From positions 124,001 to 188,000 of the IMG/VR virus record IMGVR_UViG_3300035698_010479: a stretch of 64,000 nt of DNA, one strand, 5' to 3'. The notes beneath the pieces were generated by a model, which saw only the letters and a program-made list of their open reading frames with translations, made no database searches and was not told the DNA's origin. Both the position numbers and the translations under genes were made by a program. This document shows positions 1,290-64,000 of this stretch, piece after piece (positions within the stretch are counted from its first letter, which is position 1; each line of letters begins with the position of its first letter).

Positions 1290-1312
1290 AAAATCTCTCC
1301 TTTAATTAATAA

Positions 1313-1621: not shown

Positions 1622-2642
1622 TTAGGTACCCATATATTACTTCCATAGTTAACTCAGCAGGGCTATCTGTTTCGCGTTTAACAGACGGGGTTATATCAAT
1701 ATCTACAACAGGAATTCCTTCCTTAGTTAGAGATTTCACACCCATAGTTGCCGCCGCCCTCCCAGATTTATCTGCGTCATACATCATTATTACACCATTT
1801 AAGGCATATATCTTTAGTAGTTGTACTTGCCCAGGACTTAGAAAAGATCCCATTGTACAAACTACATTATATATCCCGTAATCATATAAGCGCCATACTG
1901 ATTTAAAACCCTCTACTACAACTATTGGTGCTATATTACCATATACTTTAGCATTATGCAAGTTATAAAGCACTGAATCTTTTATAAAGCCTGTAGTAAT
2001 AATATATTTAAAAGAGTCGTCTGGTGGGTTAAGTCTTGTATCTTTTAAAGAATAAGCTTTTAAAGCACCACTAACATCTCGTAATGGGATTATGTCTCTA
2101 AGTATACCAAATTCATCTGTAAGCCCTCCAGCTATCTCGAAGTAGTCCAAGGTAGTGTTAGAAAAACTGTCTTGCCTTAATATGGTATTAGAACGTAAAG
2201 GTCTGTAAGAGCGTAGATGATCTTCTGACACATATGCTGGTTTCTGTATAGTAGCATAACTCTTTATAAAACTATCTCTATCCTTAGAGAATAATCTATC
2301 CGTTTTAAAAGTATTTGATAAAACAGTATCCCCTACTAAATCTTGCAGGTACTTAACTGCATCTTTAAAATCTACCTTTAAAACTCCTTTTATTAAACCT
2401 ATTAAATCATAACCATAGGTTTCCTGACATTTTGTTGTAAAACACAGCCAGGTACGGGTCTGCTTGTTTAGTCTAAACGCACTTCTATTATCCCCACCAT
2501 GAACAGCACATGCTGCTCTTATTTGTTTTGAATTTTCATTAGTTATCTTAAAACCTAAAGAATGTAACAGTAGATGTAAATCTACACTTTCTTTAAGCAC
2601 CTGAATATCTGTATTATCATAAGAGTGAGTTGTTTTCTGCAA
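1605..2642 (-). CDS. dnaG: DnaG-like DNA primase (CHC2 zinc finger plus TOPRIM)
   Basis: CAVHGGDN...WLCFTTKC zinc finger; VVVEG and MYDAD TOPRIM acidic motifs; follows the helicase. Confidence 0.9.
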   Translation of the reverse strand: MQKTTHSYDNTDIQVLKESVDLHLLLHSLGFKITNENSKQIRAACAVHGGDNRSAFRLNKQTRTWLCFTTKCQETYGYDLIGLIKGVLKVDFKDAVKYLQDLVGDTVLSNTFKTDRLFSKDRDSFIKSYATIQKPAYVSEDHLRSYRPLRSNTILRQDSFSNTTLDYFEIAGGLTDEFGILRDIIPLRDVSGALKAYSLKDTRLNPPDDSFKYIITTGFIKDSVLYNLHNAKVYGNIAPIVVVEGFKSVWRLYDYGIYNVVCTMGSFLSPGQVQLLKIYALNGVIMMYDADKSGRAAATMGVKSLTKEGIPVVDIDITPSVKRETDSPAELTMEVIYGYLNEYIR

Positions 2643-36063: not shown

Positions 36064-36065
36064 TT

Positions 36066-38636: not shown

Positions 38637-38644
38637 ATAATCTC

Positions 38645-40501: not shown

Positions 40502-40506
40502 ATATA

Positions 40507-41004
40507 TTATCCATATAAAATTGTGGGTATCCAATGAAAATCATATTCATAAGGGTCCCCTTTAACGATCACTTCCGATGTTATATCAAAATCTACTTCG
40601 CCATTATTTAAGGTTACCACCATATCTGATAAGTCTATACCTGATGATGGGTGCTTCTCTTCTATAACAAAACGTATATGTTCTGTTATAGGTACATTAA
40701 TACCCACGGGGGAAAAATTTTTTAAAGTCGGTGGGTATCTATCTACATCAAAATCCTGCCAATCTATTATGCTACACATATCAGCAATAGCTTTATTTAT
40801 TTCAGGCTCTATAAAGTCTTCTGTAACTTTGTGTACAAATCTTGGTACTATCTTATTACCACTAGAGTCCAGAGATGCGGTTCCTATCTCTAGCAACCAC
40901 ACCATTTCACCCTCTTCATCCTTTAAAGCATATTTACGTAAGTTTAAATTAAACTTTACTGCTTTTCTAGGATTTAAAGTATGCTTTACAATTATATCAG
41001 ACAT
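40507..41004 (-). CDS. virion protein with C-terminal Ig-like domain
   Basis: DRYPPTLKNFSP...SGIDLSDMVVTLN resembles the Ig-like repeats of 33454..36063. Confidence 0.5.
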   Translation of the reverse strand: MSDIIVKHTLNPRKAVKFNLNLRKYALKDEEGEMVWLLEIGTASLDSSGNKIVPRFVHKVTEDFIEPEINKAIADMCSIIDWQDFDVDRYPPTLKNFSPVGINVPITEHIRFVIEEKHPSSGIDLSDMVVTLNNGEVDFDITSEVIVKGDPYEYDFHWIPTILYG

Positions 41005-50700: not shown

Positions 50701-53700
50701 TTAATTATTTTATCCGTCTGTGCATTAAGCGCAGATACTACTGGATTAGAAGAAACAGAACTAAGAGCATTCTTTAATTCATCCTTACTAGCACCACCCA
50801 AACTTTCAGTTGTTTGAGAAGATACTTCACGCATGGAATTAAAATCTTGTTCATTTATGGGCGTTCCACGGTCAACTAAACTATTCATTAAATCGTTTAA
50901 TTTTTTGTAACCATTATCTAGACTAACTATAGCAGATCTATCAGATTCCTTATTTTTGGATACTCCAGCAGTATCAAAATCGGTATAATTGTTATCAGCT
51001 ATGCGCTCTTGTATTTTTATACGGGAAGAAGCAATTGCTGCCTGATAATCTTGTCCTGGCCTAATCGCGTCACGTATAGCTTGCGAAGAACGTAATCTCT
51101 CTTCATGTTGTTTGTATTCTTCTTGTTTCTTTGGTAGATTAGCATTTCCTAGTTTGGCCTGCATCCATTCCTGAGGAGAAGTACTTTGCCCATGCATAGT
51201 TTTAAGATACTGTGCCTTCTCTATATCAAACTGGTTGGACTTACCGCTTATTAAAGTACCTCCACCATTTCTAGCAAAATCCTCACGCTGATTTATATCT
51301 ATTTGTTGAGGTGCAAATGGACTTGAACCTCCATATAAACTATCCAATTTACTTTGCAGACCGGATGCCCCCATAGAGGCAGCATACATTGAAGTTTTTA
51401 CACTAACAATAGCAGTTTCAAATTGTTTTGCTGCATCGGTGGCTTCCATAAAATTACTCATCTTCATACTAGCAACTTCTAGTGCATGTCCAGTTTCTTC
51501 TAACTCCTTTTTAGCTGCAGCAAGTGCTAAAGTTTTTGTAACAATATCACCTGATACTATACTAGCTTGAGCACCCTTACCAAAGTAACCGTTATTAGAT
51601 GTTTGAGGGTCTTCTAATTTAAGATTATTTAAGGTATCTTCTAACTCTTTAACTTTCTGTAATTGTCCATCATATAAATTAGTATTTACTTTATATTGTG
51701 ACATAGTATCTTTCATACCAGCACTTGCTTGAAGATGTGCATATTGTGTGTTACTTATACTATCCACACTATTAGGTATTAAAGATATATCATTTGTAGC
51801 ACCTCTTAGTCTACCACCCATACCTCTATTATTAACATTATACAATGCATCAGTACGTACACTGGTAATAGTAGCAAGTTTATTTTTAATATTCTCTATA
51901 GTTCTAGCTGCTGCGTCTGTCTCTTTAATTACAGAATGTAATGCTACCCTATAGCCATCTTGTTTTTCTGTAACATTTTCAAGTTCTTTACCTATGTCTT
52001 TTAAAAAATCGTCCCATTTTTCAAGTTCATCAGCATCAGTAGCTTGTGATCTATTCTGCAAACCAGCATTCATCCTCGAAGTAAGACCTACTTTTTTATC
52101 TTCTAAAGCTGAGTACTCTTTTAAAACATTCTGTCCTCTATATTTATGGTTCAGAGAGTCCTCTGGATTAACAGAGTTTATAACCCTTAAAGAGAAATTT
52201 TTAAAATCCTCGGCCCAATCTGTTGGCCCGTAAATACCTTTTTGATCTTCTTTTCTTTTTTGAACTAGTTGGTAAAGTTCCATACTATTTAAATCGGTAA
52301 CCCCTTTGGTTTCTATATTTAAATCTTTAGGTCCAGAGAAGCCCTCAAAAGCACCAGTACCAAGTTTAAGAGAATTCTTAAAATTTTCAGCAAAATTAGC
52401 ATCAGCTATTGACTTATTCATAGCCTCAATCTGCATTAAGAATTTTTCAGCAATATCTGCCTTTCTCATCTCTTCTTTTAGTGTGGCTATCTCTTTATTA
52501 TACTTGTCATGCTCAGATATTAAAGAACTTTCAATAGCCGCAGTATCATCAAGTGCTTTATTATATTCTTTCGCAGTATCAAAAATTCTGGATACTTCTT
52601 CAGTGGGTACCTCTGCCCCGTTGTTACCGTCAGCCATTGGGTTACGTGTAGTATCATAAACTTTTTGAGCTGCCTCTGAATTAGCAAGTATAGCATCATA
52701 TATTGCAGTGTTTTCACCCTCGGCTAAATTACCTAAGTCTGTTGCTTTGGTTTTATCAGCTGATTTCTCTGCAGCGTACCTTGATAAAGTAAATGCTGAA
52801 GCAGCAGCTGCCGCTTGAGCGAACCTATTCACACTATCTTGGTCAAGTGATACAACAGACGCTGGTAAACTAGAAACTTCACCACCATTGGTATATCCCC
52901 TAACTACACCACCATTAGCAAAAGAAGTCTTTTGTCCGTGTTGTAATTTTTTTAGGTTTGTCTCACCTATTTTAGAAGCGTCTTCAGGTGATATAAAGTA
53001 TTCCCCATTACTTACACGTATATCTGATTTTGCTGACCCGCCGGATGCAAACTCGATCTGTTCTTTAGCATTCTGTGCATACTTAGAAGGTACTATAAAA
53101 GAACCGTCTGGCACGTCATTCATATTGATAGAGTCAGATGTACCTGTTCCAGGACCTTTAATCATACCTGAACCTACAGTACCACCGCCAGCATGTCCAG
53201 CTAAAGAGTCGTTATACTTATCGTAAATGTCTTCATCTTCATTTAAATTTGCATATAATAGTGAGCCTCCAGCAGCTCCTAAAGTTCCTGTAGCAAGCGC
53301 CTCATACATTTTAGGATTTGCCTTCTTAAATGCCTCATAGGCACTAGGGGAAGCCGTAGCGGTTGCTTTAATTGCAGCTGTAGTTTTTCGAGCACCTGTT
53401 ACTAAATTTTTATTTTGTAAAATTTTCCCTATTTCGGCCAAACCAGAGGCAGCTGCTCCTATACCTAAACCAACGCCTGTACCAGTTAATTTTAATAAAC
53501 CCTTAAGCCCTGTAGATATAAAACCACCACTAGCGTAAGATTCCTCTTCATTGTTAAGCAAGGAATAAGCACCTAAAGATCCTGCGGCAATTGCAGAATA
53601 TTTTAATTTTGACATTTTAGATAGTTTATCCTGCAAGCCAGCTTTTGTATTTTTTATATCTTCTAAATTAGGTGCTTTACTAGATATAAAATCCTTACCC

Positions 53701-56700
53701 ATAAGTGCACCATCAATTAAGAAACTGGCAGCTGTACCAACACCAGGAATGTTACTAACTAATCCAGAAGCCATTTCCATACCGGCACCTAGATAGTCAC
53801 CTATGGCTGCTCTTTCAGCAGCAAATCCTGCGGCGGCTACTGTACCTATGCCTGGTATCTTTTTAAGGCCTATCTTACTTGCAGCCTTAGCTGTATATTT
53901 ACCTATAGTGCCTTTTGTGTTACTTATAGCATCCCCTAAAAACATTTTAGTTACTTCAGAATTAAAACCAGCTTTCTTACCAAAAGAAGCTGCAATATCA
54001 GCTCCTTTTGTTTCAGCAGTAGCTTGGAAAGCTTTAAGCTTGTCTAAGGTATCAGCCCCAAACCCCGTGGCCTTACTGTAGCCTAATGGGTCTGATACTG
54101 CACCTTTTAAAAGAGTAGCTTGATAACGAGCTTTTTCTAAAGTATCCCCTAAAAACATTTTAGTTACTTCAGAATTAAAACCAGCTTTCTTACCAAAAGA
54201 AGCTGCAATATCAGCTCCTTTTGTTTCAGCAGTAGCTTGGAAAGCTTTAAGCTTGTCTAATCTGTCATTAACGTAGCCGCCGTCAGCGTACATAACTGGT
54301 GGACCATTTTTTAAAGCGTCTAATACTGGTTTTAACTTTTTACGCTGTTCTTCAGTTAAAACTTCCTCACCTGCAGTAAGTAGGGATGGTTGTACATCAC
54401 CTGTACCTGGTACTATTTGTTTAACGGTACCACCAGTAGAAAACTTTTGTATGAAACCTCCAGCAGCATTACCTGGAGTAGATTCAGAACTACCATTAAC
54501 TGCATCTGTATTGTTTTTTAATGCTTCAACTAAGGCGTCCAATGCGCCTAAAGATGCTGTAGCTGCGTAATCAGCTGCTTTACCTGTAAATTCTCCGGCT
54601 GAAGACATTTTACCTTTTATATCTTCGTAAGACTCACCAGTTTTTATCTTAGCACCCTCATATACTTTTGAAGCTTCTTCTTTGAGGTTGACCTCCTCAC
54701 CACGTGCCATTTTATCCGCAGAAGATTTAATAGCATCTTGGCTTGTGGTTTTAACATACTCTTTTAACTCAGCTAATTTATCTTTTAAATCTTGTGCACC
54801 TTGATTAACAGATTCCTTTGTATTTTCGCGTAAGTCTGCATTTGGATTTTCTACTTTACGTTTAAATTCTTTAGCTTTCCATTCAGCGTCAAATACAACG
54901 TTATCTTTTGTATTACTAAATGATTTTGATGCAGCTGAATATTTTGCATCTCTATCATCATTTTCCTTATTAGGTGTTACCTTAAGGTCTAAGGTTTCTT
55001 CTGTAAACTGCTTCATAAAACCTTCAGAGGCATCCTTAAATCTACTAGCAGCTTTACCTTGTTTTAGTGTACTGAATATACCATCGTCTTTCATTGCTGC
55101 AGCAAATATCGTAACTTCTTTACCAAAATCTTTTACCAACGGTGGCAAATCATCACCGGTCATACCTTGATTTAATTTAGCTGCACCATAAACACCAAGA
55201 GCTGCCCCGCCTGCACCAATTCGTTTGATATTGTCTTCGGACATTCCTAAATTACGCGCTAAAAGCATACCGCCAGAAGTACCACCGGCAGCATATCGCA
55301 TAGTACCATACATTCTAGCTTTCTTCTCTTCTGCAGCTTTGGCAGTTGTGAGTGACTCCATCTGAGGAGCATAGTCAATGAAGCCTACTTCGTTCTCTCT
55401 CTTTTTTAGATCTTGAATTTCTTTTTCATAATTTTCAATCTTCTTATTTGAGAAGTTGCTATTAAAGGCTTGGTATACACCAAAACCAGTAGCGGCTCCG
55501 GCTATATTTTTTGAGTTTAGTATTGTGCTCTCTTTTGACTTAGCTATATTTTCAGCTTGTATGCTCTGTACACCCTCTACAGTTTTATCGAAAGTAGGTG
55601 TACCTTTCTTGGTTACTAAACCAAACCAAGATTTTTCGTCAGGCATATTAGCTTTCATTTCTGAAGATAATGTTTTGAAATCCAAACCACCAAAAGCTCT
55701 CTGAATAAGTTCTTCACCTTTGAAGTCGCCTGAACCAAATATACCACTATTTACTTTATTAGTAGCACCAACTATACCCATACGGTCTACCAACTGCTTA
55801 GTAAGGTTATCTAAAGCAGCATTTGCTTTAGTAGTTTTATCAACATCTCCAGCAGAAGCTGCCTCATTTCTAATAGATGCTACCCGGTCTAATGCCTCGC
55901 TTAAACGTTCATTTTTAGTAATATTTGGCGATGGTAACATGAAATCCAATGCGTCCATAAAACTAGTTTGCATAGCTTCAGAACCAGCCGTATCCGATAG
56001 ATTATTTAGTATTTCATCTAATTTATCTACAGTTTTAGCAGTGTTCTCCGCAGTATTACTAGTATCTATCTTAAGTTCTGCAATACCTAAATCACCTGTC
56101 TTAGCTACTATGTCTGTGTATTTAGCAAAATCCTTATCACCTATAGTCGAACCAAAACCACCTGATAGATTTTTTATACTTTCTAGAGCTACTTTTGATC
56201 TTTCTACAGTATACATCTGTTCAGCTTTACCAGATTTTCTAATTTCTAACTCTTTAAGTTTTTTGGAGTTTTCTTCAAATTTAGAAGACTTTATTAATAA
56301 TCGTTCTTGTGAAGATAAATCTGCCTTATTATATTTACCTAAATCTACGTTGGCTAATGAAGCATCTCTACCTTTTAATAGACCAGAAGTTTCTTTTGAT
56401 AAAGGAGATCTTGTCTTCTCTACTGCTATGTTTTCCTTAACAGCACGAGTATTAGCTTCCATAGTTTTAGTCAAATCAGCGAATACTGCACGATACTGTA
56501 AAACTACTTGATTATTTCTAAGTATATTTTGAAGCTTCATTAGAGACTCGTAAAGACCAGTCGACATTTCAACACTACTTGTGTCCAAACCGTCAAGATG
56601 CATTTTTTCCAACTGCTCTAAACTAGTTTTGTATTCATGGAGAGGTTTATTGTAATATTTTTCAAAATCATCAGCCCAACCTTTCTGAAAAGGTGACTCA

Positions 56701-59700
56701 CCAAAACCTTCAGTAGGATTAAAACCTTTATCTCCTTGAATAATAGTAGATGTACTAATGTCGCTAAAGAAACGTTCTCCAAGATTGAAGTCTGTTTTGA
56801 ACCCCTTCTTAGCTAGACCTACTAACCCTGCACTGGCACCAGTAATAATAGTACCTAACGCATCTATTCTTTCGGACATATCTTGTTCTATAACTTTAGT
56901 TGGTAATATAGATTCAACTAAATCCTGCATATTATTATCAAATTTACGTTCGTCTATTTTTAAAGTCTTAGAGTTAAAGTAAGTAGCTACCCATTCAAAT
57001 ATACCATCTGAAGTTTCCTTAAGTTTTACAATGGCTTGTTGTCCTGCCATATTGAAACCTTTGGCAGCGTCATCTGTAAAAGTAACTAGGTCACCGCTTA
57101 ATACTTTACCCTCTCTTTTTGATACACCAGCAGTTTCTGTATTAGCTACACTAAGTGCTTTAGTAGCACCAAGATTATTACTTTCAGGGAACAAACGTTT
57201 CATTACCTCTGCTCCTAATACATCCTCTTTTGTAACCTTTCCTTTCACACCTTTAACATTAAACTGGGGCTCAACGTCTATCATCAACTGATAGCCCGCC
57301 TGTAATTCGTCAGCACCCATTATACTAGCTACTTCGTCTTTACCAAAACCAGCTGTTGGTATGTTTGATAATGATCTTTTAAATTCAGAATATGTAACAT
57401 TAAAAGTATCTTTAATCTTAGCCAATTTACCCTGTAGATTTTTTATATCGTCATCATAAACTGTGGACATGGGCGAAGCGTTTTTCTTTGCAACTAAATT
57501 ATTAAGCTTTCCTGTAAGTATTTCAAGACTTTTAGCAGGTGCTACACTTATCTGATTACTTATTAATTCACCTATAATAGGTATCTCTTTAGTAAGGTCT
57601 TTAAGTTCACTCTTCCACGTTTCAGAACCATCTGTTTTTGTTAGTGCCTCTATATGTCTAGCAGCAACACTAGAATCCTTTGCGGCTAAATCTCTAACTT
57701 TAGACCTCTCAAAAGTATTTAAAAGTGTTTGATAATTATCAGAAGTTCTTAGGATAACATTACCAAGCTTGTCGTAACCAGAGATCATATTTGTATTTTC
57801 TCTAGCTATTTTTTCACCTAATTTTAATGCGTCTGTCTGTACAGATGATAGGGCATTTAAAGGATTAACATAGGTACCAAGATACTTCTGTCTATCAGCA
57901 GTTGCTGGGTCTTCACTTTTAGCTACATCCTTTAACTTTCTCTTAATATCCCCTGTAGATTTTTCAGTATCTCTGATACTAAACAAATCTGTCTCATCTT
58001 TTGTTATGGCACCATACATAGAATCAGCAAAATCTTTAGAAGATCTTGTCGTCTTCATGAATTCAGCGCCAAGTGTTTTTATAGCGGGTGTCAACAAACC
58101 CAAAGTTAATAACATTGGTGCCATAGATTTTATAACACCTGCGTTATCTTTGGCCCAGTTTTTAAATATATCCCCACCGGCACCTAATTTTTTTGAAAAC
58201 TCATCTATAAAGATACCAGCAGCAGCACCACCTAATCCAGCCACCTCTGTTGCCACACCTAGGAAAGATGAAGCAACTTTACCTATACCTTTCATACCGC
58301 CTAAAGCAAATGCACCTTTTACGCCTTCTGATTTAGAATATTTTGATGCTGCCCCACCTGCCAAATCTTTATATGTAACATCTTCGTCTTTTCCATATTT
58401 ACCACCGCCTAGCGATGATACAACGGCACTCAACCAAGAGCTACCTCTAACCATAGATTGTCCAAAACCCTGACCAGCTTTACCAGTACCTTGTAAACCC
58501 CCTCCTACTGTGTCATTAAAAGATTTTCCAGCTGATACTAACATGTAAGCAGCCTTTCCTAAAGCTGATTCAAAATCTCTAATACCTTTACCCTGGCCTC
58601 TGCCTTCTACTTGGTCAGCTACTAATGTTTTCAAACCTCTTGAAGATGGGTCAGTAGCCCCTGCACCCATTATTTCAAAAGAAGCTGTTTTAAGTTCATC
58701 TTTTATAGAACCTATTAAATTACCAACTATAGGTGTACCACCAGAAAAGAAGTTAGATATAGTATCTAGAATTTTAGCGCCTTTAGATAAATAGGTAAAT
58801 AACCCTAACGCGGCTACACTGGCTATCTTAAAAGAGGCTGGTATAGCAGAGACAGTTTCAGCCATAGCTCGCATACCCTGAAGACCAAACTTGGCTGCTG
58901 GGAAAGCTATTTTACCAAAAGCCAACTGTAATTCTAGGGAAGCTGACTTGGTCTGTTCAACTTGTTTCGAGTAAGTCTGCATTAACTCTGCATTTCTTCT
59001 TGAAGCCGAACCTTGTGAATTCATACTATCTTGCACGCCGTCCAATGCTTCCTGCCAGTTATCCATAAGAACAAGTAAAGAGTTATATTGTCTAGTACCA
59101 CCTATAGCCTGTGCTACAGTTAGTTTCTGGGCACTATTTAACTCTTTCCATTTCTCTGCTAGGCCGCTAAGAATATCAAAGCCGCCACGTAACTCACCTG
59201 CACCGGTTATAGTAGGAACATTAAGCTTAGCCAACTCATTAGGTCCTTTCTCAGAAGATAATCTTCTCATTATAAATCTCAAGGAAGTACCTACCTCTTT
59301 ACCAGACTGTCTAGTAACAGAACCTATAGAGGCCACAATACCGTTTAACTGGTCAAAAGTAATACCAGCTGTGCTAGCAGCTGCTGCTGACTTTTTAATA
59401 GCTTCAGCCATATCACCTGCTGTAATAGCATGTTTAGATTCAACTTCAGACCATGAATCTAAGAAACGCATAGATCTATCACCCTCAGTTCTAAACACCT
59501 TCATAGCTGCGGTAAGAGCTTCTGTAGCATCTTTTGCTTTTAACGTAGTAACGTTAGCAGCCAACATAGATGTGTTAGTTCTATCGGTAACTTCTGATTG
59601 AGACAAGCCCTGTTGCGCGTATACAACCATAGCATCTATAACACCAGTAGTACCGGTGCCATACTCTTTGGCCATACCAACAGCCGATTTCTGTAAACCG

Positions 59701-62700
59701 GAAAAATCTGTAGTTTTAGCTGGCATAACCATTTTTAATCTTGCCATACCTACTTCTACTTCTGCTACTGTTTCAACTGCCTCTTTTAATTTATCTACGC
59801 CGCCATAAATTAATGAAGAAGCTGCGCCCCATTTTACAGCTCTCTCAATAGCCCCTAAGAAGCCTCTATTGGCACCAGCTAGAGAAGCTGCCATATCTTC
59901 TTGTTTTGCTGTAAAAATACCTACTGTTTGTCCTGCAGTATCTACAGACTCACTTAATTTATGAAAAAGAACTCGTTGATTTTCGATAGGTTTACCAGAA
60001 TCATCAAATACCTTAGCATCATAAGTATAACGCTCTCCTACCTTTGCACCACCCTCTTCGTTACCTTTACCGTAGTATTCCCGTAATTTTGATATATTGC
60101 GTTTATGTAAGTTAGCTTGCATTTCTGGATCGGCCCATTTAGGTACCTGTACAACACCCGTGTCACCCCATACACCTGGTCCACCAGGTTGTGTTTTTCT
60201 TCCCATATCAACTTTAGAGAGCTTATTTTCTGCGTCTTTTAAAAGTTTAATAGTAGTTTCTAAATTCTTACTTTCTACAGATAGTGGGCTATCAGAGACA
60301 TTAAACTGTTTAAATAACTCTAAAGCACTTCTAAGTCTTGTTACTCTCTCTGCGGCACCCTCAAAATTCCAGGCCTCAGCAATCTCAGGTCCTAGTCTTT
60401 CCAGTAATCTACCATTACTCATGAGAGCTATGGATTCATCGTTCATTTCTGTAAGGTCTTTTATAGCATTTCTTGCTTTGTCTGTAGGTGCAGTTATATT
60501 ACCTCTATTTTTACCAGAAAGATCTCCTGTTATATCATCAAATACTTTTTTAAGTAAGTCACTATCTGGATCAGTTATATCACCTAAATCCCTATTTGAT
60601 TTTCTTTGTATATCTACAGGAGCTTGATATACACCAGCTGCTTTAGCTATATCTGGAAAAGCCCAAACTTTATTAGCAGTATATATGTCGCTTCTTTTAC
60701 CAGTATCATCCGTTATTTTTTTCTGTACAGCAGTAACAGCTGATTCTAGTCTATTATAAGCCTTACCTTCTTCATTACCACCCATACCTTTAACACTTTC
60801 ATAAGCTATTTGGGCTTCCTCTGCCTTATCCATTAAATACCCTACTACAGCGTCTTTATATAGCCGCCACGCAGTAGATATGTCTTTACCCGACATACCC
60901 TGTGCAGGATCTTGTTGATTCAATATACGGGCATTTTTAGTGAAATCTAGGAATTCTGATACATCTATACCTCCACGGTCTTTTGCCCCTTCGATATAAT
61001 CCTGAGCTTCTGTTGTAAGTTTCTTAGCTTCATTATTAAAATCCATACCCCTAGCTTCATACAAAGATTTGGAAGCGTCCCTTAATAATTGTAAATTAGA
61101 CAACTCTACTGACGGGCCTGTTCCTTCATGTGGTTGTAATGTTTGTGCTCTACCCGCAGCTGATTTACGTTGTTCTTCCGTAGTTTTAAATTTATCTACA
61201 GTTTGATTTATATTTCCTATACCTGAGTCATCATCTTTAAACGCACCTGTGGTATAAGCAGAATTACCTGTATTGCCAAGATTAGCGGAGTCTATTAATT
61301 GGCCTAATAATTTTACAGGGAATACTAGACTAGCATTAATACCTTCAATGAATACTGGAATTACTCCTCCAGTTGTTGGTATAGCTAGTTTAGTACCTTC
61401 TGGTGGACTAGGTGGTAAGTTGCCTCCTGTTACGCCTGTATTAAATGCTGGGTGTGGTGGCTCTTCACCTCTATTAGTATTGTACTCAACCCCAGTTTGA
61501 TTTTGTGGTGTAATAGTAGGTATAACACTTGCTGATTCTTGAGTTTTAAATACTCCAAGAGATGCGTTAGCTATAGCATCTTTATCTTCAGTAACACCTA
61601 TAGATATATCTCTTCCAGCTGTTGGTAATGGATCTTTTCTGTATCCTGATACTTCTGAAATTCTAGACATCCTGGCACGAAGTATTTCCAAGTCTCCTAG
61701 TTTATCATTATACTTAGAAATACTATCTATCTCTTCAGATTTAGCATTCTCAGGGATATCCGATAATTTAGCTACATGTTCAGGAGAAGTAAGTATACTA
61801 TTTTGCTTTCTATCACTTATAGGTGCTAAACCTAAAGTATTTTCCATGGAGCCTATTAATTCTTTTATAGGTCCCATAGGTGCTTTACCTAAGGCAAACT
61901 GTTCACTAGTTGTTCCATATAGCAAACTACTAGCTTTAGAATAATCTTTTTGATTAACACCTTCTTTCCCTAGAGAATCAAAAGTCTTTACAAGCTCAGC
62001 GTAAGCGCCTTTACTTCTAAATGTCTTAGCTACTGAGTCCAAACCATCTTTAAATTGTTCATCGAAGGTATCATCTACTTGGAAACCACCAGTTCTAAAT
62101 TTATACATAGGGTCATTAATATTAGTGACCATACTAGATACATCTATACCCTTAGGTGGGTTACCATCTTTAGGCTCATAACGTTTACTTAATATTTTAT
62201 AAGCCACCTCAGCGCTCATTGGTTTTTCACTTTTAGCTTGAATACCCTTTATTGCTAACTGTTCAATAGTACTTTGAAGATCTCTTAAAAACCCATCAAA
62301 GCCTAGATTCTTTACTAAAGTGTCAGTTAAGTCAGATCTATTCATATCAGAAACATTACCTATGTTAGCACCTGTTGCTGCTACTTGATCTTTCAACTCT
62401 TGTGTAGAAAACTTACCAAAAGTATTTCTTAATGACTCCTCATTTATATTCTTAAACTTCTTTAAATCATCATAACTTTTATTTTTGTCAAGTTTCTGCA
62501 TTAAGTCTGCTAAACCACTAGGACCTGTAGTAACACCTTTGACCAATTCACCAGCTATTGGTCTCTCACCAGCATGTTTTACATCCATACCTTTTTGAAT
62601 AGTAAATCTAAAGAACTCATTTAATTGAGTATTTCGTTCTCGTGTAACAAAGTCGTTATCTATTTTTCCTGATTTAGTCTTATCAGAAAGAGCTATCTCA

Positions 62701-64000
62701 CCTTCACCAAAACCACGTTTACTTTCATATGCACGCATAAGTTTAGTCATACTTTCAGTATCTGTACCAGTGTTTATTTTAAATAACTGGGCATTTACTG
62801 CTGTATCTAACTTCATATTAGCTAACTCTTCTTTCAAGTGTCCTTCAATTAAAGATTTGATATTTATATCTTTTATTGTGTCAAGCTGTAATGAAGCTGC
62901 TTGTGAAGCATCACCAAGATCTTCAATATCTTTTATAGAACTATCATCAAATTTGGCTCCTGCTTTATCAAAAATTGCTCTCATAACACGACTTACCGAC
63001 TCACCGCCAGAAGTCATATTTAGATCTTGTTCTTTACTAGCCAAAATACCAACCTTCTCCTTAGGATTTAAATAAGATAAGTCTTCAGTTGTAAAGGGTT
63101 TATCAAGAAAAGAGTAACCTTTCGAGCTATCAAATTTTTTACTAAATGCTTGAGACATATAAGATAGTGGTAAATCACCTTGTGAAGGTTGTTTAGAATC
63201 ATAGGAATAAAAATCACCAAATTTACCAGCTGTAGAGTCTATATCTTCTGTAAGCATTTTAAAATGCTTATAAATATCATTTCTAGCTTCAGATGTTTTA
63301 GCGGTATGGAGCTCAATCTGGTCGCCGTCATAATCAAGTTTCTGTGCATGAGCCACATATTTTGGAAGTACTGCAGATATCGCCTCGTTTAATCTATCAA
63401 TTGTATTGGTTAACTCATCGGCTTTAGGGTCATCTCCGGTATCTCTTGCAGATTCTCTTTCTATAGACAAGGTTTTTACTTTATCTTTTATAGAATTATA
63501 AACCTCTTCAAAAGCACCCATATCCATCTCAGGTGTTCCAGGTACCATTAAGGAATCATCCCCTATACCACCTGCAGTTTGTACAAGTTTAGCTTTGTAG
63601 GGTTTTAGTGAGGAAGTTCCAGTAAATGGAAAACGTACGCTCTCTATATAAGGAGATAATTCTTCGTTAACATACCGCTTGATATCTTCAGCCCTGTCGC
63701 CACCGTTTACTTTTTTAGCAGTGTTTTCTAGTTTATCTGAGTAGACCAACAAATCTTTTAAAGAGCCCTCAACTTGATTACCTTTATCACCATTTAATAA
63801 AAAGCCTTTATCGGCATCGTATTTCTTGGTAAAATTTACTCTAAGTTTTTCAGCTAACTTACTAGACACACCCAACTCATGTTGTTTTAATACGGGCATA
63901 CCAATTTCTTTGTACTTAGCAACATTGTCTGAATGTTCTGCAGTAAGTTTGTCAATTTTAGAAATTTCACTAGTGAGGTCTAATCCATCGATCCCACGTA
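47769..64000 (-). CDS. giant tail tape-measure protein fused to an N-terminal two-barrel RNA polymerase beta'-like region (5'-truncated, at least 5409 aa)
   Basis: The frame stays open from 63899 to the edge (...RGIDGLDLTSEISKIDKLTAEHSDNVAKYKEIG-MPVLK). TP901-type TMP core at about 58900-59870 (AVETVAEVEVGMARLKMV...YAQQG...ATEALTA...VGTSLRFIMRRL...AIGGTRQYN). RNAP-like motifs RFP, DYDGDQIELH and QKGMDVKH lie upstream of it. Confidence 0.85.
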   Translation of the reverse strand, partial: RGIDGLDLTSEISKIDKLTAEHSDNVAKYKEIGMPVLKQHELGVSSKLAEKLRVNFTKKYDADKGFLLNGDKGNQVEGSLKDLLVYSDKLENTAKKVNGGDRAEDIKRYVNEELSPYIESVRFPFTGTSSLKPYKAKLVQTAGGIGDDSLMVPGTPEMDMGAFEEVYNSIKDKVKTLSIERESARDTGDDPKADELTNTIDRLNEAISAVLPKYVAHAQKLDYDGDQIELHTAKTSEARNDIYKHFKMLTEDIDSTAGKFGDFYSYDSKQPSQGDLPLSYMSQAFSKKFDSSKGYSFLDKPFTTEDLSYLNPKEKVGILASKEQDLNMTSGGESVSRVMRAIFDKAGAKFDDSSIKDIEDLGDASQAASLQLDTIKDINIKSLIEGHLKEELANMKLDTAVNAQLFKINTGTDTESMTKLMRAYESKRGFGEGEIALSDKTKSGKIDNDFVTRERNTQLNEFFRFTIQKGMDVKHAGERPIAGELVKGVTTGPSGLADLMQKLDKNKSYDDLKKFKNINEESLRNTFGKFSTQELKDQVAATGANIGNVSDMNRSDLTDTLVKNLGFDGFLRDLQSTIEQLAIKGIQAKSEKPMSAEVAYKILSKRYEPKDGNPPKGIDVSSMVTNINDPMYKFRTGGFQVDDTFDEQFKDGLDSVAKTFRSKGAYAELVKTFDSLGKEGVNQKDYSKASSLLYGTTSEQFALGKAPMGPIKELIGSMENTLGLAPISDRKQNSILTSPEHVAKLSDIPENAKSEEIDSISKYNDKLGDLEILRARMSRISEVSGYRKDPLPTAGRDISIGVTEDKDAIANASLGVFKTQESASVIPTITPQNQTGVEYNTNRGEEPPHPAFNTGVTGGNLPPSPPEGTKLAIPTTGGVIPVFIEGINASLVFPVKLLGQLIDSANLGNTGNSAYTTGAFKDDDSGIGNINQTVDKFKTTEEQRKSAAGRAQTLQPHEGTGPSVELSNLQLLRDASKSLYEARGMDFNNEAKKLTTEAQDYIEGAKDRGGIDVSEFLDFTKNARILNQQDPAQGMSGKDISTAWRLYKDAVVGYLMDKAEEAQIAYESVKGMGGNEEGKAYNRLESAVTAVQKKITDDTGKRSDIYTANKVWAFPDIAKAAGVYQAPVDIQRKSNRDLGDITDPDSDLLKKVFDDITGDLSGKNRGNITAPTDKARNAIKDLTEMNDESIALMSNGRLLERLGPEIAEAWNFEGAAERVTRLRSALELFKQFNVSDSPLSVESKNLETTIKLLKDAENKLSKVDMGRKTQPGGPGVWGDTGVVQVPKWADPEMQANLHKRNISKLREYYGKGNEEGGAKVGERYTYDAKVFDDSGKPIENQRVLFHKLSESVDTAGQTVGIFTAKQEDMAASLAGANRGFLGAIERAVKWGAASSLIYGGVDKLKEAVETVAEVEVGMARLKMVMPAKTTDFSGLQKSAVGMAKEYGTGTTGVIDAMVVYAQQGLSQSEVTDRTNTSMLAANVTTLKAKDATEALTAAMKVFRTEGDRSMRFLDSWSEVESKHAITAGDMAEAIKKSAAAASTAGITFDQLNGIVASIGSVTRQSGKEVGTSLRFIMRRLSSEKGPNELAKLNVPTITGAGELRGGFDILSGLAEKWKELNSAQKLTVAQAIGGTRQYNSLLVLMDNWQEALDGVQDSMNSQGSASRRNAELMQTYSKQVEQTKSASLELQLAFGKIAFPAAKFGLQGMRAMAETVSAIPASFKIASVAALGLFTYLSKGAKILDTISNFFSGGTPIVGNLIGSIKDELKTASFEIMGAGATDPSSRGLKTLVADQVEGRGQGKGIRDFESALGKAAYMLVSAGKSFNDTVGGGLQGTGKAGQGFGQSMVRGSSWLSAVVSSLGGGKYGKDEDVTYKDLAGGAASKYSKSEGVKGAFALGGMKGIGKVASSFLGVATEVAGLGGAAAGIFIDEFSKKLGAGGDIFKNWAKDNAGVIKSMAPMLLTLGLLTPAIKTLGAEFMKTTRSSKDFADSMYGAITKDETDLFSIRDTEKSTGDIKRKLKDVAKSEDPATADRQKYLGTYVNPLNALSSVQTDALKLGEKIARENTNMISGYDKLGNVILRTSDNYQTLLNTFERSKVRDLAAKDSSVAARHIEALTKTDGSETWKSELKDLTKEIPIIGELISNQISVAPAKSLEILTGKLNNLVAKKNASPMSTVYDDDIKNLQGKLAKIKDTFNVTYSEFKRSLSNIPTAGFGKDEVASIMGADELQAGYQLMIDVEPQFNVKGVKGKVTKEDVLGAEVMKRLFPESNNLGATKALSVANTETAGVSKREGKVLSGDLVTFTDDAAKGFNMAGQQAIVKLKETSDGIFEWVATYFNSKTLKIDERKFDNNMQDLVESILPTKVIEQDMSERIDALGTIITGASAGLVGLAKKGFKTDFNLGERFFSDISTSTIIQGDKGFNPTEGFGESPFQKGWADDFEKYYNKPLHEYKTSLEQLEKMHLDGLDTSSVEMSTGLYESLMKLQNILRNNQVVLQYRAVFADLTKTMEANTRAVKENIAVEKTRSPLSKETSGLLKGRDASLANVDLGKYNKADLSSQERLLIKSSKFEENSKKLKELEIRKSGKAEQMYTVERSKVALESIKNLSGGFGSTIGDKDFAKYTDIVAKTGDLGIAELKIDTSNTAENTAKTVDKLDEILNNLSDTAGSEAMQTSFMDALDFMLPSPNITKNERLSEALDRVASIRNEAASAGDVDKTTKANAALDNLTKQLVDRMGIVGATNKVNSGIFGSGDFKGEELIQRAFGGLDFKTLSSEMKANMPDEKSWFGLVTKKGTPTFDKTVEGVQSIQAENIAKSKESTILNSKNIAGAATGFGVYQAFNSNFSNKKIENYEKEIQDLKKRENEVGFIDYAPQMESLTTAKAAEEKKARMYGTMRYAAGGTSGGMLLARNLGMSEDNIKRIGAGGAALGVYGAAKLNQGMTGDDLPPLVKDFGKEVTIFAAAMKDDGIFSTLKQGKAASRFKDASEGFMKQFTEETLDLKVTPNKENDDRDAKYSAASKSFSNTKDNVVFDAEWKAKEFKRKVENPNADLRENTKESVNQGAQDLKDKLAELKEYVKTTSQDAIKSSADKMARGEEVNLKEEASKVYEGAKIKTGESYEDIKGKMSSAGEFTGKAADYAATASLGALDALVEALKNNTDAVNGSSESTPGNAAGGFIQKFSTGGTVKQIVPGTGDVQPSLLTAGEEVLTEEQRKKLKPVLDALKNGPPVMYADGGYVNDRLDKLKAFQATAETKGADIAASFGKKAGFNSEVTKMFLGDTLEKARYQATLLKGAVSDPLGYSKATGFGADTLDKLKAFQATAETKGADIAASFGKKAGFNSEVTKMFLGDAISNTKGTIGKYTAKAASKIGLKKIPGIGTVAAAGFAAERAAIGDYLGAGMEMASGLVSNIPGVGTAASFLIDGALMGKDFISSKAPNLEDIKNTKAGLQDKLSKMSKLKYSAIAAGSLGAYSLLNNEEESYASGGFISTGLKGLLKLTGTGVGLGIGAAASGLAEIGKILQNKNLVTGARKTTAAIKATATASPSAYEAFKKANPKMYEALATGTLGAAGGSLLYANLNEDEDIYDKYNDSLAGHAGGGTVGSGMIKGPGTGTSDSINMNDVPDGSFIVPSKYAQNAKEQIEFASGGSAKSDIRVSNGEYFISPEDASKIGETNLKKLQHGQKTSFANGGVVRGYTNGGEVSSLPASVVSLDQDSVNRFAQAAAAASAFTLSRYAAEKSADKTKATDLGNLAEGENTAIYDAILANSEAAQKVYDTTRNPMADGNNGAEVPTEEVSRIFDTAKEYNKALDDTAAIESSLISEHDKYNKEIATLKEEMRKADIAEKFLMQIEAMNKSIADANFAENFKNSLKLGTGAFEGFSGPKDLNIETKGVTDLNSMELYQLVQKRKEDQKGIYGPTDWAEDFKNFSLRVINSVNPEDSLNHKYRGQNVLKEYSALEDKKVGLTSRMNAGLQNRSQATDADELEKWDDFLKDIGKELENVTEKQDGYRVALHSVIKETDAAARTIENIKNKLATITSVRTDALYNVNNRGMGGRLRGATNDISLIPNSVDSISNTQYAHLQASAGMKDTMSQYKVNTNLYDGQLQKVKELEDTLNNLKLEDPQTSNNGYFGKGAQASIVSGDIVTKTLALAAAKKELEETGHALEVASMKMSNFMEATDAAKQFETAIVSVKTSMYAASMGASGLQSKLDSLYGGSSPFAPQQIDINQREDFARNGGGTLISGKSNQFDIEKAQYLKTMHGQSTSPQEWMQAKLGNANLPKKQEEYKQHEERLRSSQAIRDAIRPGQDYQAAIASSRIKIQERIADNNYTDFDTAGVSKNKESDRSAIVSLDNGYKKLNDLMNSLVDRGTPINEQDFNSMREVSSQTTESLGGASKDELKNALSSVSSNPVVSALNAQTDKIINTLLTSSQLVEALGVLKVDKSPTFMEELSKVGDILSRSFSDPTGLASGGTVGSIIRGAGTGTSDDISMAVPSGSYVIQAKYAQATKSRLNSFAKGGQVPINVSNGELLLTPEEVAKIGGTATADAFNSGRLPDDATIRSSWSKEDYNNHGFANEKDYSQQIGGLETPMIDPVDILSGFGSAALFKNVVSKATNVTTKSGLSGYLKEAQGIMGTNLDVSKYTKEIMNNKALLKEVMSKGQAIYGDSASLINIVTRTGPIGLKNMVDSIATKGFAKGGSVDEQEKLRKQLFDMYSKDAIVSYPSEPKQVYTTDVYKDNKGVWQNNTSLTPSNQNTSGVSLKERVAASLDNSTSSNNIINSEETTEQLINKISSLAKFRDSNSIDSRGLHLSLQDANLTHAVTPEEEEGKKQLTDEITKLGNISRGNTAYYENAMKEPTTKLIAKQIDATRAGASVNLPTKRWSDIKGLTVMNGTGKGTPFVADNLNKGPDALSELQKRVNLASADTPERKAYLSTLDDKGRESFFKSLSITDRNVKTLASAGGMAAVATNQKANFMMSEAFQHSSNFESFYLDKRKSDMAKLVDEKYGKGTFKKRSERNIDGLRTYNEQLNGFTTRAGNDPDFYKKYMQSMSGTIPEKMLIEIISRLTKQKQGEILTRGDNTKNNFLAGGDVNSNNLSRQVRHNGGVAHKSGSYFLEGGEVILDKNYFGNNTTQNNSASINTQAPAKQTVEIEGLDAFEKIVSNLEKSLNKLTNIKIEGIDKLTDIKIEGLSDLRDIKIEGLSDLKDIKIEGLSELKNIKIEGINDLHDIKITGIDSIRDIKVEGLEKLANIRIENIDQLKNISITGLENLRDIKILGLDELKDINVKTSSVGADMGDMFASTLKDFDSRVGNLEKSSADQISLIKTTVKDIVAELPVLDINQKSEIAGLKKDMLATSSEVSGLTSSIITLKQVLNVSINELKESQNNAMTHIYSIKRV
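48120..48449 (-). repeat. 10 x 33-bp (11-aa) coding tandem repeat, consensus DIKIEGLxxLx
   Basis: NIKIEGIDKLT DIKIEGLSDLR DIKIEGLSDLK DIKIEGLSELK ... DIKILGLDELK; the DNA unit ctcaaaccttctatctttatatc occurs three times identically. Confidence 0.95.
53931..54260. repeat. perfect 117-bp direct repeat (53931-54047 and 54144-54260), in frame
   Basis: The two copies are identical by eye, with period 213 bp; each encodes LDKLKAFQATAETKGADIAASFGKKAGFNSEVTKMFLGD. Confidence 0.95.
63321..63335 (-). other. DYDGD: predicted catalytic Mg-binding aspartate triad of a two-barrel RNA polymerase
   Basis: Context AQKLDYDGDQIELHTAKTSEARNDI versus E. coli beta' [24 protein letters not shown]. Confidence 0.8.

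What the first reader, a model, noticed from the sequence alone, without database searches (positions are those of the whole stretch)
63360..63535. About 65-residue helical insertion inside the catalytic barrel, just before the aspartate triad
Seen: the RxP arginine is residue 89 and the first Asp is residue 189 of the ORF-track protein, 100 aa apart. In E. coli beta' the R425-D460 spacing is 35. The extra segment (EEVYNSIKDKVKTLSIERESARDTGDDPKADELTNTIDRLNEAISAV) looks like an alpha-helical hairpin. Inference: a lineage-specific insertion next to the active site that could bind template, replace missing subunits or autoinhibit. It could also weaken standard HMM matches to this polymerase.
Basis: partly seen in the sequence, partly recalled or inferred. 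Interest (0 to 1): 0.6.

Follow-up and report, generated by a model that had tools for sequence, protein, structure and literature searches.

The report
Helical hairpin inside phage polymerase barrel
A giant tail tape-measure protein of an uncultured jumbo phage contains an RNA polymerase whose catalytic barrel carries a conserved, acidic two-helix arm just before the metal-binding aspartates, at a site where no solved polymerase of this kind has an insert; its job is still unknown.

Summary
On the minus strand, the Arg of RFP (window 63635-63633) and the first Asp of DYDGD (63335-63333) are 100 residues apart. The spacing is 35 in E. coli beta' (checked) and 39 in a second, compact RNA polymerase of the same genome.

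Two AlphaFold models (pLDDT 87 and 82) put both motifs in one double-psi barrel. That barrel superposes on beta' chains and on an 86-residue designed barrel. The extra 55 residues (63366-63530) form an antiparallel two-helix hairpin between strand b5 and the short helix before the Asp loop.

All 76 aligned relatives have the hairpin (spacing 99-128). It is mostly acidic (median net charge -5). None of six solved two-barrel polymerases has an insert at that site.

The ORF is 7,473 aa and starts 6.2 kb beyond the window edge. It holds the beta-like barrel about 900 residues upstream and a tape-measure domain downstream. It is a tape-measure-fused virion polymerase of the kind known from Thermus phage P23-45, but its fold is nearer beta/beta'.

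The hairpin's function is untested. Template binding is unlikely. I favour a structural brace or docking arm. The hairpin does cut Pfam and profile matches short.

The parts
47769..64000 (-). In-window part (about residue 2064 to 7473, plus stop) of a 7,473-aa ORF. The ORF continues to genome position 194190, which would be window coordinate 70190.
   Evidence: TTG start with AGGAGG 7 nt upstream. 77 relatives, most of 6,500-8,000 aa.
63300..64000 (-). Mg-binding double-psi beta-barrel (DPBB-A, beta'-like), giant 2040-2297. Its first ~24 residues lie beyond the window edge.
   Evidence: Model m452ef58de614 residues 891-1148 align to the 86-residue designed DPBB 7dww_A (Z 9.1, rmsd 1.9, 86 aligned). 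Model m589de82adfd5 residues 9-244 align to 8w9z_C 394-539 (Z 9.2, rmsd 2.2, 95 aligned, 23% id).
63627..63635 (-). RFP motif (R2186-F-P2188), counterpart of beta' R425-A-P427.
   Evidence: R and P invariant in 76 sequences. Aligned to RFP of the compact polymerase P0080 by hhalign once the hairpin columns are removed.
63366..63530 (-). The insert: a 55-residue antiparallel helical hairpin (giant 2221-2275) between strand b5 (ending in PG) and the short helix before the Asp loop.
63441..63521 (-). Helix 1 of the hairpin (giant 2224-2250).
   Evidence: DSSP on the AF2 models, pLDDT 93-97. Hydrophobic positions recur at 3-4 residue spacing.
63453..63458 (-). Conserved polar pair R2245-E2246, towards the tip end of helix 1.
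   Evidence: R in 95% and E in 88% of 76 sequences.
63369..63431 (-). Helix 2 of the hairpin (giant 2254-2274). It contains L2260, T2261, I2264 and L2267, each 88-96% conserved.
63321..63335 (-). DYDGD metal-binding motif (giant 2286-2290).
   Evidence: D, D, G, D invariant. Matches Pfam PF00623 positions 132-162.
63657..63761 (-). Helical insert (giant ~2144-2178) at the site of the canonical helical insert that bacterial beta' has before RxP.
   Evidence: Helices 995-1011 and 1016-1029 of model m452ef58de614. The E. coli beta' sequence has a helical stretch at the same place. Iyer et al. describe this insert site (PMC7824862).
63900..64000 (-). In-window part of another family-specific helical insert (giant ~2052-2097) between strands b1 and b2 of the same barrel.
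   Evidence: Helices 905-916 and 924-946 of model m452ef58de614. Conserved in alignment A4.
62715..62867 (-). 51-residue helix (giant 2442-2492) with invariant K2471 and G2475. Candidate bridge helix.
   Evidence: Helix 353-403 of model m589de82adfd5. Invariant columns. The bridge-helix assignment is inferred only.
59097..59678 (-). Tape-measure core domain (Pfam PF10145, PhageMin_Tail), giant 3505-3698.
   Evidence: E 3.2e-25, 89.6 bits against a cut-off of 33.2.

Best explanation
The segment is a family-specific antiparallel two-helix hairpin of 55-75 residues. It is inserted in the Mg-binding (beta'-like) double-psi barrel of an RNA polymerase module, between strand b5 and the short helix that leads into the DxDGD loop.

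The polymerase module (about giant residues 585-2700) is part of a 7,473-aa tail tape-measure protein of an uncultured jumbo phage. The enzyme is therefore most likely carried in the virion and delivered with the DNA, as in Thermus phage P23-45.

Proposed role (inferred, not shown): the hairpin is a structural brace and docking arm. Its conserved hydrophobic stripes pack it against neighbouring helices of the same domain, which fixes the helix and loop that hold the three aspartates. Its acidic, solvent-facing surface and the conserved R2245/E2246/T2261 cluster towards the tip end would contact another protein surface, either in the giant protein itself or in a partner, rather than nucleic acid.

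Confidence by part: what it is and where it sits, about 0.9. That the host protein is a tape-measure-fused two-barrel polymerase, about 0.85. The brace or docking role, about 0.35.
For: Shown:
- Spacing is 100 here, 35 in E. coli beta' and 39 in P0080.
- The hairpin is predicted with pLDDT 93-97 in two independent AF2 runs.
- RFP and DYDGD lie in one barrel that superposes on a designed DPBB (Z 9.1, rmsd 1.9 over 86/86) and on beta' chains (8w9z_C Z 9.2, rmsd 2.2, 23% id; 2pmz_A Z 9.2).
- Giant 1151-1637 aligns to second-largest RNAP subunits (8qma_A Z 16.2, 4c2m_B 15.6, 7ogp_C 15.1, 6j9e_C 15.1). Giant 1695-2349 aligns to largest subunits (7ob9_A Z 11.8, 9mu7_A 11.6).
- The beta-like motifs E-D-Q (1236-1238) and K1338/R1342/K1346 are invariant.
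- PF10145 is in the same ORF.
- 77 relatives carry PF10145, most of them 6,500-8,000 aa.
- The insert is present in all 76 aligned relatives (spacing 99-128) and in the distant L027/L028 group.
- Hairpin identity (31% over all pairs) is like the rest of the module (37%). Hydrophobic positions recur at 3-4 residue spacing, and R2245, E2246, T2261, I2264 and L2267 are 88-96% conserved.
- Net charge has a median of -5, range -9 to +2.
- Four-helix-bundle proteins align over model range about 900-1130, and three-helix bundles over 131-250 of the shorter model. This suggests the hairpin is packed against other helices.
- A structure-based alignment of six solved two-barrel polymerases has only 39-49 residues across this half of the barrel. 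All its long inserts are in the other half (supplement of PMC10770324).
- Precedent for a tape-measure-fused virion RNAP plus a second non-virion RNAP: PMC10770324. A second compact RNAP exists in this genome.
Against: - No coordinates were available to me. Where the hairpin points (secondary channel, RNA exit, outer surface) and what it touches are inferred only from alignment ranges.
- The test of hairpin against the b1-b2 insert as separate chains gave no verdict.
- No expression, virion or activity data exist. The phage is uncultured and no GenBank phage matches.
- A conserved acidic arm next to an active site would also fit an inhibitory or gating role.
- The beta-like barrel region is modelled with low confidence (pLDDT 42-89 in model residues 1-230).
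Confidence: 0.55

Rival explanations
1. Autoinhibitory or gating element. The acidic hairpin occupies or screens the DNA/RNA or NTP path while the polymerase is stored in the tail as part of the tape measure, and moves away after ejection and refolding.
For: The base of the hairpin is only about 11 residues from the first catalytic Asp. The surface is acidic in most relatives. The virion RNAP of a crAss-like phage was crystallised with its catalytic motif in a conformation incompatible with catalysis (bioRxiv 10.1101/2020.03.07.982082), so stored virion polymerases can be inactive.
Against: The helices carry conserved hydrophobic stripes and are predicted with very high confidence as a fixed element. 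This fits a packed arm better than a mobile plug. The charge is not uniformly acidic (range up to +2). There is no positional evidence.
Confidence: 0.15
2. Substitute for parts that this single-chain enzyme lacks. Candidates are the rim-helix or funnel region of beta' at the NTP entry channel, or the small omega/Rpb6-type subunit that latches onto the beta' barrel region. It could also be a landing pad for a phage or host factor.
For: Only about 150 residues separate DYDGD from the long candidate bridge helix, against about 300 in E. coli beta' (bridge-helix position from my own knowledge). That suggests a reduced funnel. R2245, E2246 and T2261 form a conserved polar cluster towards the tip end, as expected of a binding site.
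Against: This rests purely on inference. No superposition on a multisubunit enzyme was possible. Matches of the hairpin alone to other helical hairpins (Z about 8) are generic.
Confidence: 0.2
3. The hairpin binds the template or the RNA-DNA hybrid directly.
For: It lies close to the active site in sequence.
Against: Median net charge is -5 and only 4 of 76 relatives are net positive. The one nearly invariant basic residue (R2245) sits next to a conserved Glu.
Confidence: 0.05
4. There is no true insertion. RFP is not the counterpart of beta' RxP and the 100-residue spacing is an alignment illusion, or the DxDGD is a chance motif in a non-polymerase tail protein.
For: Pfam, PHROGs and PDB sequence searches give no significant match for the whole region. 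Foldseek E-values are weak (0.09 or more).
Against: VIA-align gives Z 16.2 to beta-type and 11.8 to beta'-type subunits in the expected order. The barrel matches an 86-residue DPBB at rmsd 1.9. Both barrels have invariant catalytic motifs. With hairpin columns removed, RFP through DYDGD aligns to RFP through DFDGD of the compact polymerase at 94.5% probability.
Confidence: 0.03

Closest known systems
Thermus phage P23-45 gp96, a tape-measure-fused virion RNA polymerase (PDB 8H2M; PMC10770324)
   Same: A two-barrel RNA polymerase lies N-terminal to the tape-measure part in one giant polypeptide. The genome also encodes a second, compact two-barrel polymerase. The gene sits where a tape-measure gene is expected, upstream of genes with Big_1 and Laminin_G_3 domains.
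   Different: gp96 has 5,002 aa, a minimal polymerase of about 800 residues at the very N-terminus, and no clamp. Here the conserved module spans about 2,100 residues and starts after about 585 residues of unknown function. It aligns better to beta and beta' chains (Z 16.2 and 11.8) than to gp96 (Z 7.7). There is no detectable sequence similarity. The corresponding half of the gp96 barrel has 41 residues against about 100 here.
beta' / Rpb1 Mg-binding double-psi barrel of multisubunit RNA polymerases (Pfam PF00623)
   Same: RxP, the PG/HP turn, the short helix and DxDGD-x-x-x-H come in the same order. The helical insert before RxP is at the same place as in bacterial beta'. Structural superposition gives rmsd 2.2 A over 95 residues with 23% identity.
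   Different: Arg-to-Asp spacing is 100 instead of 35. There is an extra helical insert between b1 and b2. The Pfam score is below the cut-off and covers only the part after the hairpin. Both barrels are in one chain.
Compact 1,085-aa single-chain polymerase of the same phage genome (P0080, G000:C1:23334-26591)
   Same: It has both barrels in one chain, in the order beta-like then beta'-like, with RFP and DFDGD motifs.
   Different: Its spacing is 39 with no hairpin. PF00623 matches contiguously over HMM positions 58-160. It has no tape-measure part.
crAss-like phage phi14:2 gp66 and Neurospora QDE-1 (single-chain two-barrel polymerases)
   Same: Single chain with both barrels. gp66 is virion-packaged and large (2,180 aa).
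   Different: QDE-1 aligns at Z 10.2 but with rmsd 7.2. gp66 is not among the 50 listed matches. Their barrels have 43-49 residues in this half, and their long inserts are in the other half.
Gre/DksA-type coiled-coil hairpins and the KIF21A antiparallel coiled coil
   Same: An antiparallel two-helix coiled coil with acidic character. The family profile hits KIF21A (5d3a) at E 0.0013 over the hairpin only.
   Different: Gre and DksA are separate proteins whose tip reaches the active site. Here the base, not the tip, is next to the active site. The KIF21A match is a coiled-coil resemblance without any other shared feature.

Membership tests
Two-barrel (double-psi beta-barrel) RNA polymerase superfamily | Mg-binding barrel with an invariant DxDGD loop | tested here: met
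   DYDGD at giant 2286-2290. D, D, G, D are invariant in 76 sequences. The barrel matches 7dww_A at rmsd 1.9 over 86 residues.
Two-barrel (double-psi beta-barrel) RNA polymerase superfamily | Second barrel supplying conserved basic residues (the beta GxKxxxRxGxKG-type motif) | tested here: met
   K1338, R1342, K1346 and G1347 are invariant, and E-D-Q 1236-1238 is invariant. Giant 1151-1637 aligns to beta-type subunits at Z 14-16. Local pLDDT is low in part of this barrel.
Two-barrel (double-psi beta-barrel) RNA polymerase superfamily | Bridge helix and trigger loop after the Mg-binding barrel | tested here: inconclusive
   There is a 51-residue helix at giant 2442-2492 with invariant K2471 and G2475. 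The model aligns to beta' chains out to their C-terminal third (6edt_D 434-1229, Z 9.3). No residue-level check was made.
Two-barrel (double-psi beta-barrel) RNA polymerase superfamily | Template-dependent RNA synthesis | not testable with these tools
   Needs a purified fragment and an RNA-DNA scaffold assay.
Tape-measure-fused virion RNA polymerase (P23-45 gp96 type) | Polymerase module and tape-measure domain in one polypeptide, polymerase first | tested here: met
   One ORF of 7,473 aa without stops. Polymerase about 585-2700. PF10145 at 3505-3698. All 77 relatives except two shorter proteins (3,698 and 4,042 aa) carry PF10145.
Tape-measure-fused virion RNA polymerase (P23-45 gp96 type) | Sequence or close structural kinship with gp96 (flat, clamp-less fold) | tested here: not met
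   No sequence match to any PDB chain. 8h2m_A reaches only Z 7.7, below the beta/beta' matches. An archaeal clamp-domain entry (3qqc_A) aligns to model 526-879 at Z 8.3, so a clamp-like part may exist.
Tape-measure-fused virion RNA polymerase (P23-45 gp96 type) | Presence in the virion and transcription of the first genes to enter | not testable with these tools
   Uncultured phage. No match among 50,697 GenBank phage records.
Tape-measure-fused virion RNA polymerase (P23-45 gp96 type) | A second, non-virion two-barrel polymerase in the genome | tested here: met
   P0080, 1,085 aa. PF00623 scores 27.3 bits in the genome scan (cut-off 25.3) and 24.1 bits on the protein. PF00562 E 0.0017. PHROG 'RNA polymerase beta subunit' families at E 1e-5.
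Pfam PF00623 (RNA_pol_Rpb1_2), canonical beta' barrel | Score over the gathering cut-off with a contiguous match through RxP and DxDGD | tested here: not met
   15.9-17.4 bits against a cut-off of 25.3. Only HMM positions 132-162, after the hairpin, are matched.
Pfam PF00623 (RNA_pol_Rpb1_2), canonical beta' barrel | Arg(RxP)-to-Asp spacing of about 35-40 | tested here: not met
   100 here and 99-128 in the family. 35 in E. coli beta' and 39 in P0080.

The most novel reading that the evidence does not exclude
The hairpin is a built-in switch specific to tape-measure-borne polymerases. It would be an acidic arm, hinged next to the aspartate loop, that keeps the enzyme silent or partly unfolded while it is stored in the tail, and that locks the active site into shape (or opens the NTP channel) only after ejection. 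Together with the giant fusion it would mark a previously undescribed lineage of beta/beta'-like single-chain virion polymerases in jumbo phages, separate from P23-45 gp96 and from crAss gp66.
Probability: 0.15. Interest if true: 0.75.

Novelty: new variant of a known kind. Interest (0 to 1): 0.5.

Why it matters
The stretch from RxP to DxDGD is among the least variable parts of two-barrel polymerases. In a published structure-based alignment of six solved enzymes this half of the barrel is 39-49 residues long with no insert. A conserved 55-75-residue arm at that site shows the catalytic barrel tolerates a large elaboration next to the metal loop.

The arm also gives a handle for asking how a polymerase that travels as part of a tape measure is stored, refolded and switched on.

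Practically, the insert helps explain why standard profiles do not recognise this polymerase. The proteins are annotated only as tape measure proteins.

The family behind it (77 relatives found, most of 6,500-8,000 aa, on contigs up to 318 kb) extends the single known case of a tape-measure-fused polymerase from a Thermus siphovirus to uncultured jumbo phages. Its polymerase module is larger and of a different structural type.

Tried and rejected
- **Family scans of giant 1-2396.** Pfam and PHROGs gave no hit even at E 1.
- **PDB sequence searches.** phmmer of giant 1065-3000 found nothing. A profile of alignment A3 gave only sub-threshold hits to Rpb1/Rpc1 at the DFDGD block, plus a KIF21A coiled-coil hit over the hairpin. 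I take the KIF21A hit as compositional and structural resemblance, not kinship.
- **Foldseek.** Against PDB, the top 50 were nearly all beta'-type chains but E was 0.09 or more. Against BFVD, nothing reached E 0.001.
- **hhalign of the family profile.** Against E. coli beta' 331-530 only 20-26 columns around DFDGD aligned, with or without the hairpin columns.
- **Complex prediction.** The hairpin (2219-2279) against the b1-b2 insert (2048-2100) scored 0.27, under the mark. That is no verdict, and I do not use it for or against packing.
- **tblastn against GenBank phages.** No match.
- **Host assignment from genome contigs.** Three MAG contigs came back, labelled Woesearchaeota, Fermentibacteria and Gammaproteobacteria. 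They are mutually inconsistent and probably binned phage contigs.
- **tRNA scan of the window.** None found.
- **PHROGs on ten neighbouring genes.** None hit.
- **Gre/DksA-like reading of the hairpin.** Rejected, because the base and not the tip adjoins the active site.
- **Not run.** The large representative-protein search, because the word search had already found 77 relatives and no claim here rests on absence of relatives. No read-mapping tool was used.

Full report
**What is at the coordinates**

The finding lies on the minus strand in a very long ORF that runs off the right edge of the window. The window is positions 124001-188000 of a 228,458-bp IMG/VR virus record, linear and about 86% complete.

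With the rest of the genome, the ORF is 7,473 codons long (genome 171769-194190). It has a TTG start preceded by AGGAGG at 7 nt.

In full-length numbering:
- The RFP arginine is R2186 (window 63635-63633).
- DYDGD is 2286-2290 (window 63335-63321).

I read E. coli rpoC from NC_000913.3 and confirmed R425 and D460, 35 apart.

**Is the protein a two-barrel RNA polymerase?**

Sequence libraries alone do not say so:
- Pfam, PHROGs and PDB sequence searches of the region gave nothing significant.
- PF00623 (Rpb1 domain 2) touches only the 31 HMM positions after the insert, at 16-17 bits against a cut-off of 25.3.

Homologues and structure prediction settle it.

*Homologues.* IMG/VR scans and the word search gave 25 loci and 77 proteins. 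Most of the proteins are 6,500-8,000 aa, and all but two carry the tape-measure family PF10145. Their conserved core corresponds to giant residues about 585-2700.

*Models.* Two AlphaFold2 models were built on 76-sequence alignments:
- Giant 2090-2700: pLDDT 86.7, pTM 0.84.
- Giant 1150-2349: pLDDT 81.9, pTM 0.67.

*Structure search without Foldseek.*
- Giant 1151-1637 aligns to second-largest subunits of multisubunit polymerases: plastid PEP 8qma_A Z 16.2, Pol I 4c2m_B 15.6, phiKZ non-virion enzyme 7ogp_C 15.1, Xanthomonas beta 6j9e_C 15.1, AR9 7s00_C 14.9.
- Giant 1695-2349 aligns to largest subunits: 7ob9_A Z 11.8, 9mu7_A 11.6, 2pmz_A 11.1.
- QDE-1 (Z 10.2, rmsd 7.2), P23-45 gp96 (Z 7.7) and P74-26 gp62 (Z 7.6) score lower.

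*Catalytic residues.* The beta-like signatures E-D-Q 1236-1238 and K1338/R1342/K1346 are invariant. The same holds for R2186, P2188, G2191, G2218 and L-D-x-D-G-D.

So both barrels are present in one chain, beta-like first. The beta-like barrel lies outside the window.

**The barrel and the insert**

In the long model, residues 891-1148 (giant 2040-2297) align to an 86-residue designed double-psi barrel over all 86 residues at rmsd 1.9 A (7dww_A, Z 9.1) and to other DPBB domains. In the short model, residues 9-244 align to 146 residues of 8w9z_C (95 aligned, rmsd 2.2 A, 23% identity) and to 2pmz_A and 7ogp_A.

The order of elements is the same as in beta' (E. coli sequence):
1. Strand b1.
2. 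Strand b2 with the G-x-P motif.
3. A helical insert.
4. Strand b3 with RxP.
5. Strands b4 and b5, ending in PG (HP in beta').
6. A short helix.
7. DxDGD.
8. Strand b6 with His.

There are three helical inserts:
- One between b1 and b2 (giant about 2052-2097).
- One before RxP (about 2144-2178), at the site where beta' also has a helical insert. Iyer et al. describe this site as variable between lineages (PMC7824862).
- The one in question, giant 2221-2275 (window 63366-63530), between the PG turn and the short helix.

The insert in question consists of helices 2224-2250 and 2254-2274, joined by a short turn, with block pLDDT 93-97 in both models. Of the 65 extra residues relative to E. coli, 59 are here and 6 are in the b4-b5 loop.

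**Conservation**

- All 76 aligned sequences (24-82% identity to the query) have an Arg-to-Asp spacing of 99-128.
- The hairpin is 55-75 residues long. Length changes are confined to the turn and to one stretch of helix 1.
- Hydrophobic positions recur every 3-4 residues on both helices.
- R2245 (95%), E2246 (88%), L2260, T2261 (88%), I2264 (93%) and L2267 (96%) are conserved.
- Mean pairwise identity in the hairpin is 31%. The comparable figures are 57% for the barrel strands and motifs, 37% for the whole C-terminal half of the module and 30% for the insert before RxP.
- A more distant group of giant proteins (L027, L028; 26-27% identity over the barrel only) has an insert of the same length, so the feature is old within this clade.
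- Net charge is negative in most members (median -5, range -9 to +2).

**Comparison with other polymerases**

The same genome encodes a compact 1,085-aa single-chain polymerase outside the window (G000:C1:23334-26591, P0080):
- Its RFP and DFDGD are 39 residues apart.
- PF00623 matches it contiguously over HMM positions 58-160.
- PF00562 matches its beta-like part.
- It is also collinear with Rpb1 over 185 residues.

The structure-based alignment of the Mg-binding barrels of P23-45 gp96 and gp64, QDE-1, phi14:2 gp66, Thermus beta' and PolD has 39-49 residues in the half that runs from after RxP to strand b6. All its long lineage-specific inserts are in the first half (supplement of PMC10770324). 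The present family has about 100 residues there. The site of this insert is therefore unusual among characterised enzymes. I have not surveyed all uncharacterised families.

**Effect on profile matches**

I removed the hairpin columns from the family alignment and repeated hhalign.
- Against the compact polymerase, the match grew from 28 columns (probability 71%, E 3.6e-5) to 64 columns running from RFP to beyond DFDGD (probability 94.5%, E 7.6e-8).
- Against a single E. coli beta' sequence, nothing changed.

General divergence contributes too.

**Wider context**

PF10145 (tape-measure core) matches giant 3505-3698 (window 59097-59678) at E 3.2e-25. Genes downstream on the same strand carry Big_1 and Laminin_G_3 domains, as expected after a tape-measure gene.

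The only described precedent I found is Thermus phage P23-45:
- Its 5,002-aa tape measure gp96 starts with a two-barrel virion polymerase that transcribes the first genes to enter.
- A second enzyme, gp64, takes over afterwards.

The present genome repeats that logic (fusion plus a compact second polymerase). Its polymerase module, however, is about 2,100 residues, starts after about 585 residues of unknown function, and is structurally closer to beta/beta' than to gp96. No GenBank phage record matches it. A full-text search for tape-measure and two-barrel polymerases in metagenomes found no paper, which is weak evidence that the family is undescribed.

**How it most likely works**

*Shown:*
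- A rigid, conserved, mostly acidic two-helix arm is hinged about 11 residues before the first catalytic Asp.

*Inferred:*
- Small four-helix bundles align over model range about 900-1130, and three-helix bundles over 131-250 of the shorter model. The arm is therefore probably packed against neighbouring helices. These would be the b1-b2 insert and/or the helices after strand b6. The arm is then not free in solution.
- Such an arm would brace the short helix and loop that carry the aspartates.
- The conserved R2245/E2246/T2261 cluster and the acidic face suggest contact with another protein surface.
- Direct template binding is unlikely on charge grounds.
- A gating or autoinhibitory role, or replacement of missing funnel or omega-like parts, cannot be excluded. 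I rank these lower because the element looks fixed rather than mobile.

I could not obtain coordinates, so the direction of the arm relative to the channels is unknown. A two-chain test of hairpin against the b1-b2 insert gave no verdict.

**Verdict**

The feature is a new variant within a known kind: a lineage-specific insert in a two-barrel polymerase, inside a tape-measure-fused virion enzyme. Interest is moderate. The site of the insert and the giant fusion family would interest polymerase and phage specialists, but no function is established.

Noticed in passing
outside the window: G000:C1:23334-26591 (+), locus L032:1335-4592: A second, compact (1,085 aa) single-chain two-barrel RNA polymerase in the same genome. 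It has canonical RFP-to-DFDGD spacing (39) and sub-threshold to threshold Pfam matches to Rpb1 domain 2 and Rpb2 domain 6. It is a likely non-virion partner of the tape-measure-borne enzyme.
   Followed up: partly
window 59097-59678 (-): A tape-measure core domain (PF10145, E 3.2e-25) lies inside the same 7,473-aa ORF, about 1,200 residues after the catalytic motif.
   Followed up: yes
window 63900-64000 (-) and beyond the window edge (giant ~2052-2097): Another family-specific helical hairpin sits between strands b1 and b2 of the same barrel. It may pack with the hairpin of the finding into a helical bundle. The two-chain test gave no verdict.
   Followed up: partly
window 48273-48449 (-): A tandem array of 33-nt (11-aa) units, about 5 copies at 76% match, near the C-terminus of the giant protein. 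The wider region gives a weak leucine-rich-repeat-like Pfam hit (E 0.0013, below cut-off).
   Followed up: no
giant residues 1-585 (outside the window, L003:5436-7190): An N-terminal region of about 585 residues before the conserved polymerase core. It aligns only among the closer relatives and has no family match.
   Followed up: no
relatives P0062, P0065, P0068, P0070, P0073-P0075, P0077 and P0079: Some giant homologues also carry PF00929 (RNase T-type exonuclease). One (P0079) carries helix-hairpin-helix and Pol X-like Pfam domains. Different enzymes seem to be loaded onto the same tape-measure scaffold.
   Followed up: no
window 18244-25062 and 25450-30984 (-): Two further very long ORFs (2,272 and 1,844 aa) lie downstream on the same strand. 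The 1,844-aa one has no Pfam or PHROG match and the other was not scanned.
   Followed up: partly
window 33454-40534 (-): Three ORFs of 629-869 aa carry Big_1 or Laminin_G_3 domains, as in tail fibre or baseplate proteins. None of ten neighbouring genes matches any PHROG family, which marks a very divergent phage group.
   Followed up: partly
L034, L035, L036 (genome contigs): Relatives of the giant protein sit on short MAG contigs labelled Woesearchaeota, Fermentibacteria and Gammaproteobacteria. These are probably phage contigs binned into MAGs and give no host clue.
   Followed up: no
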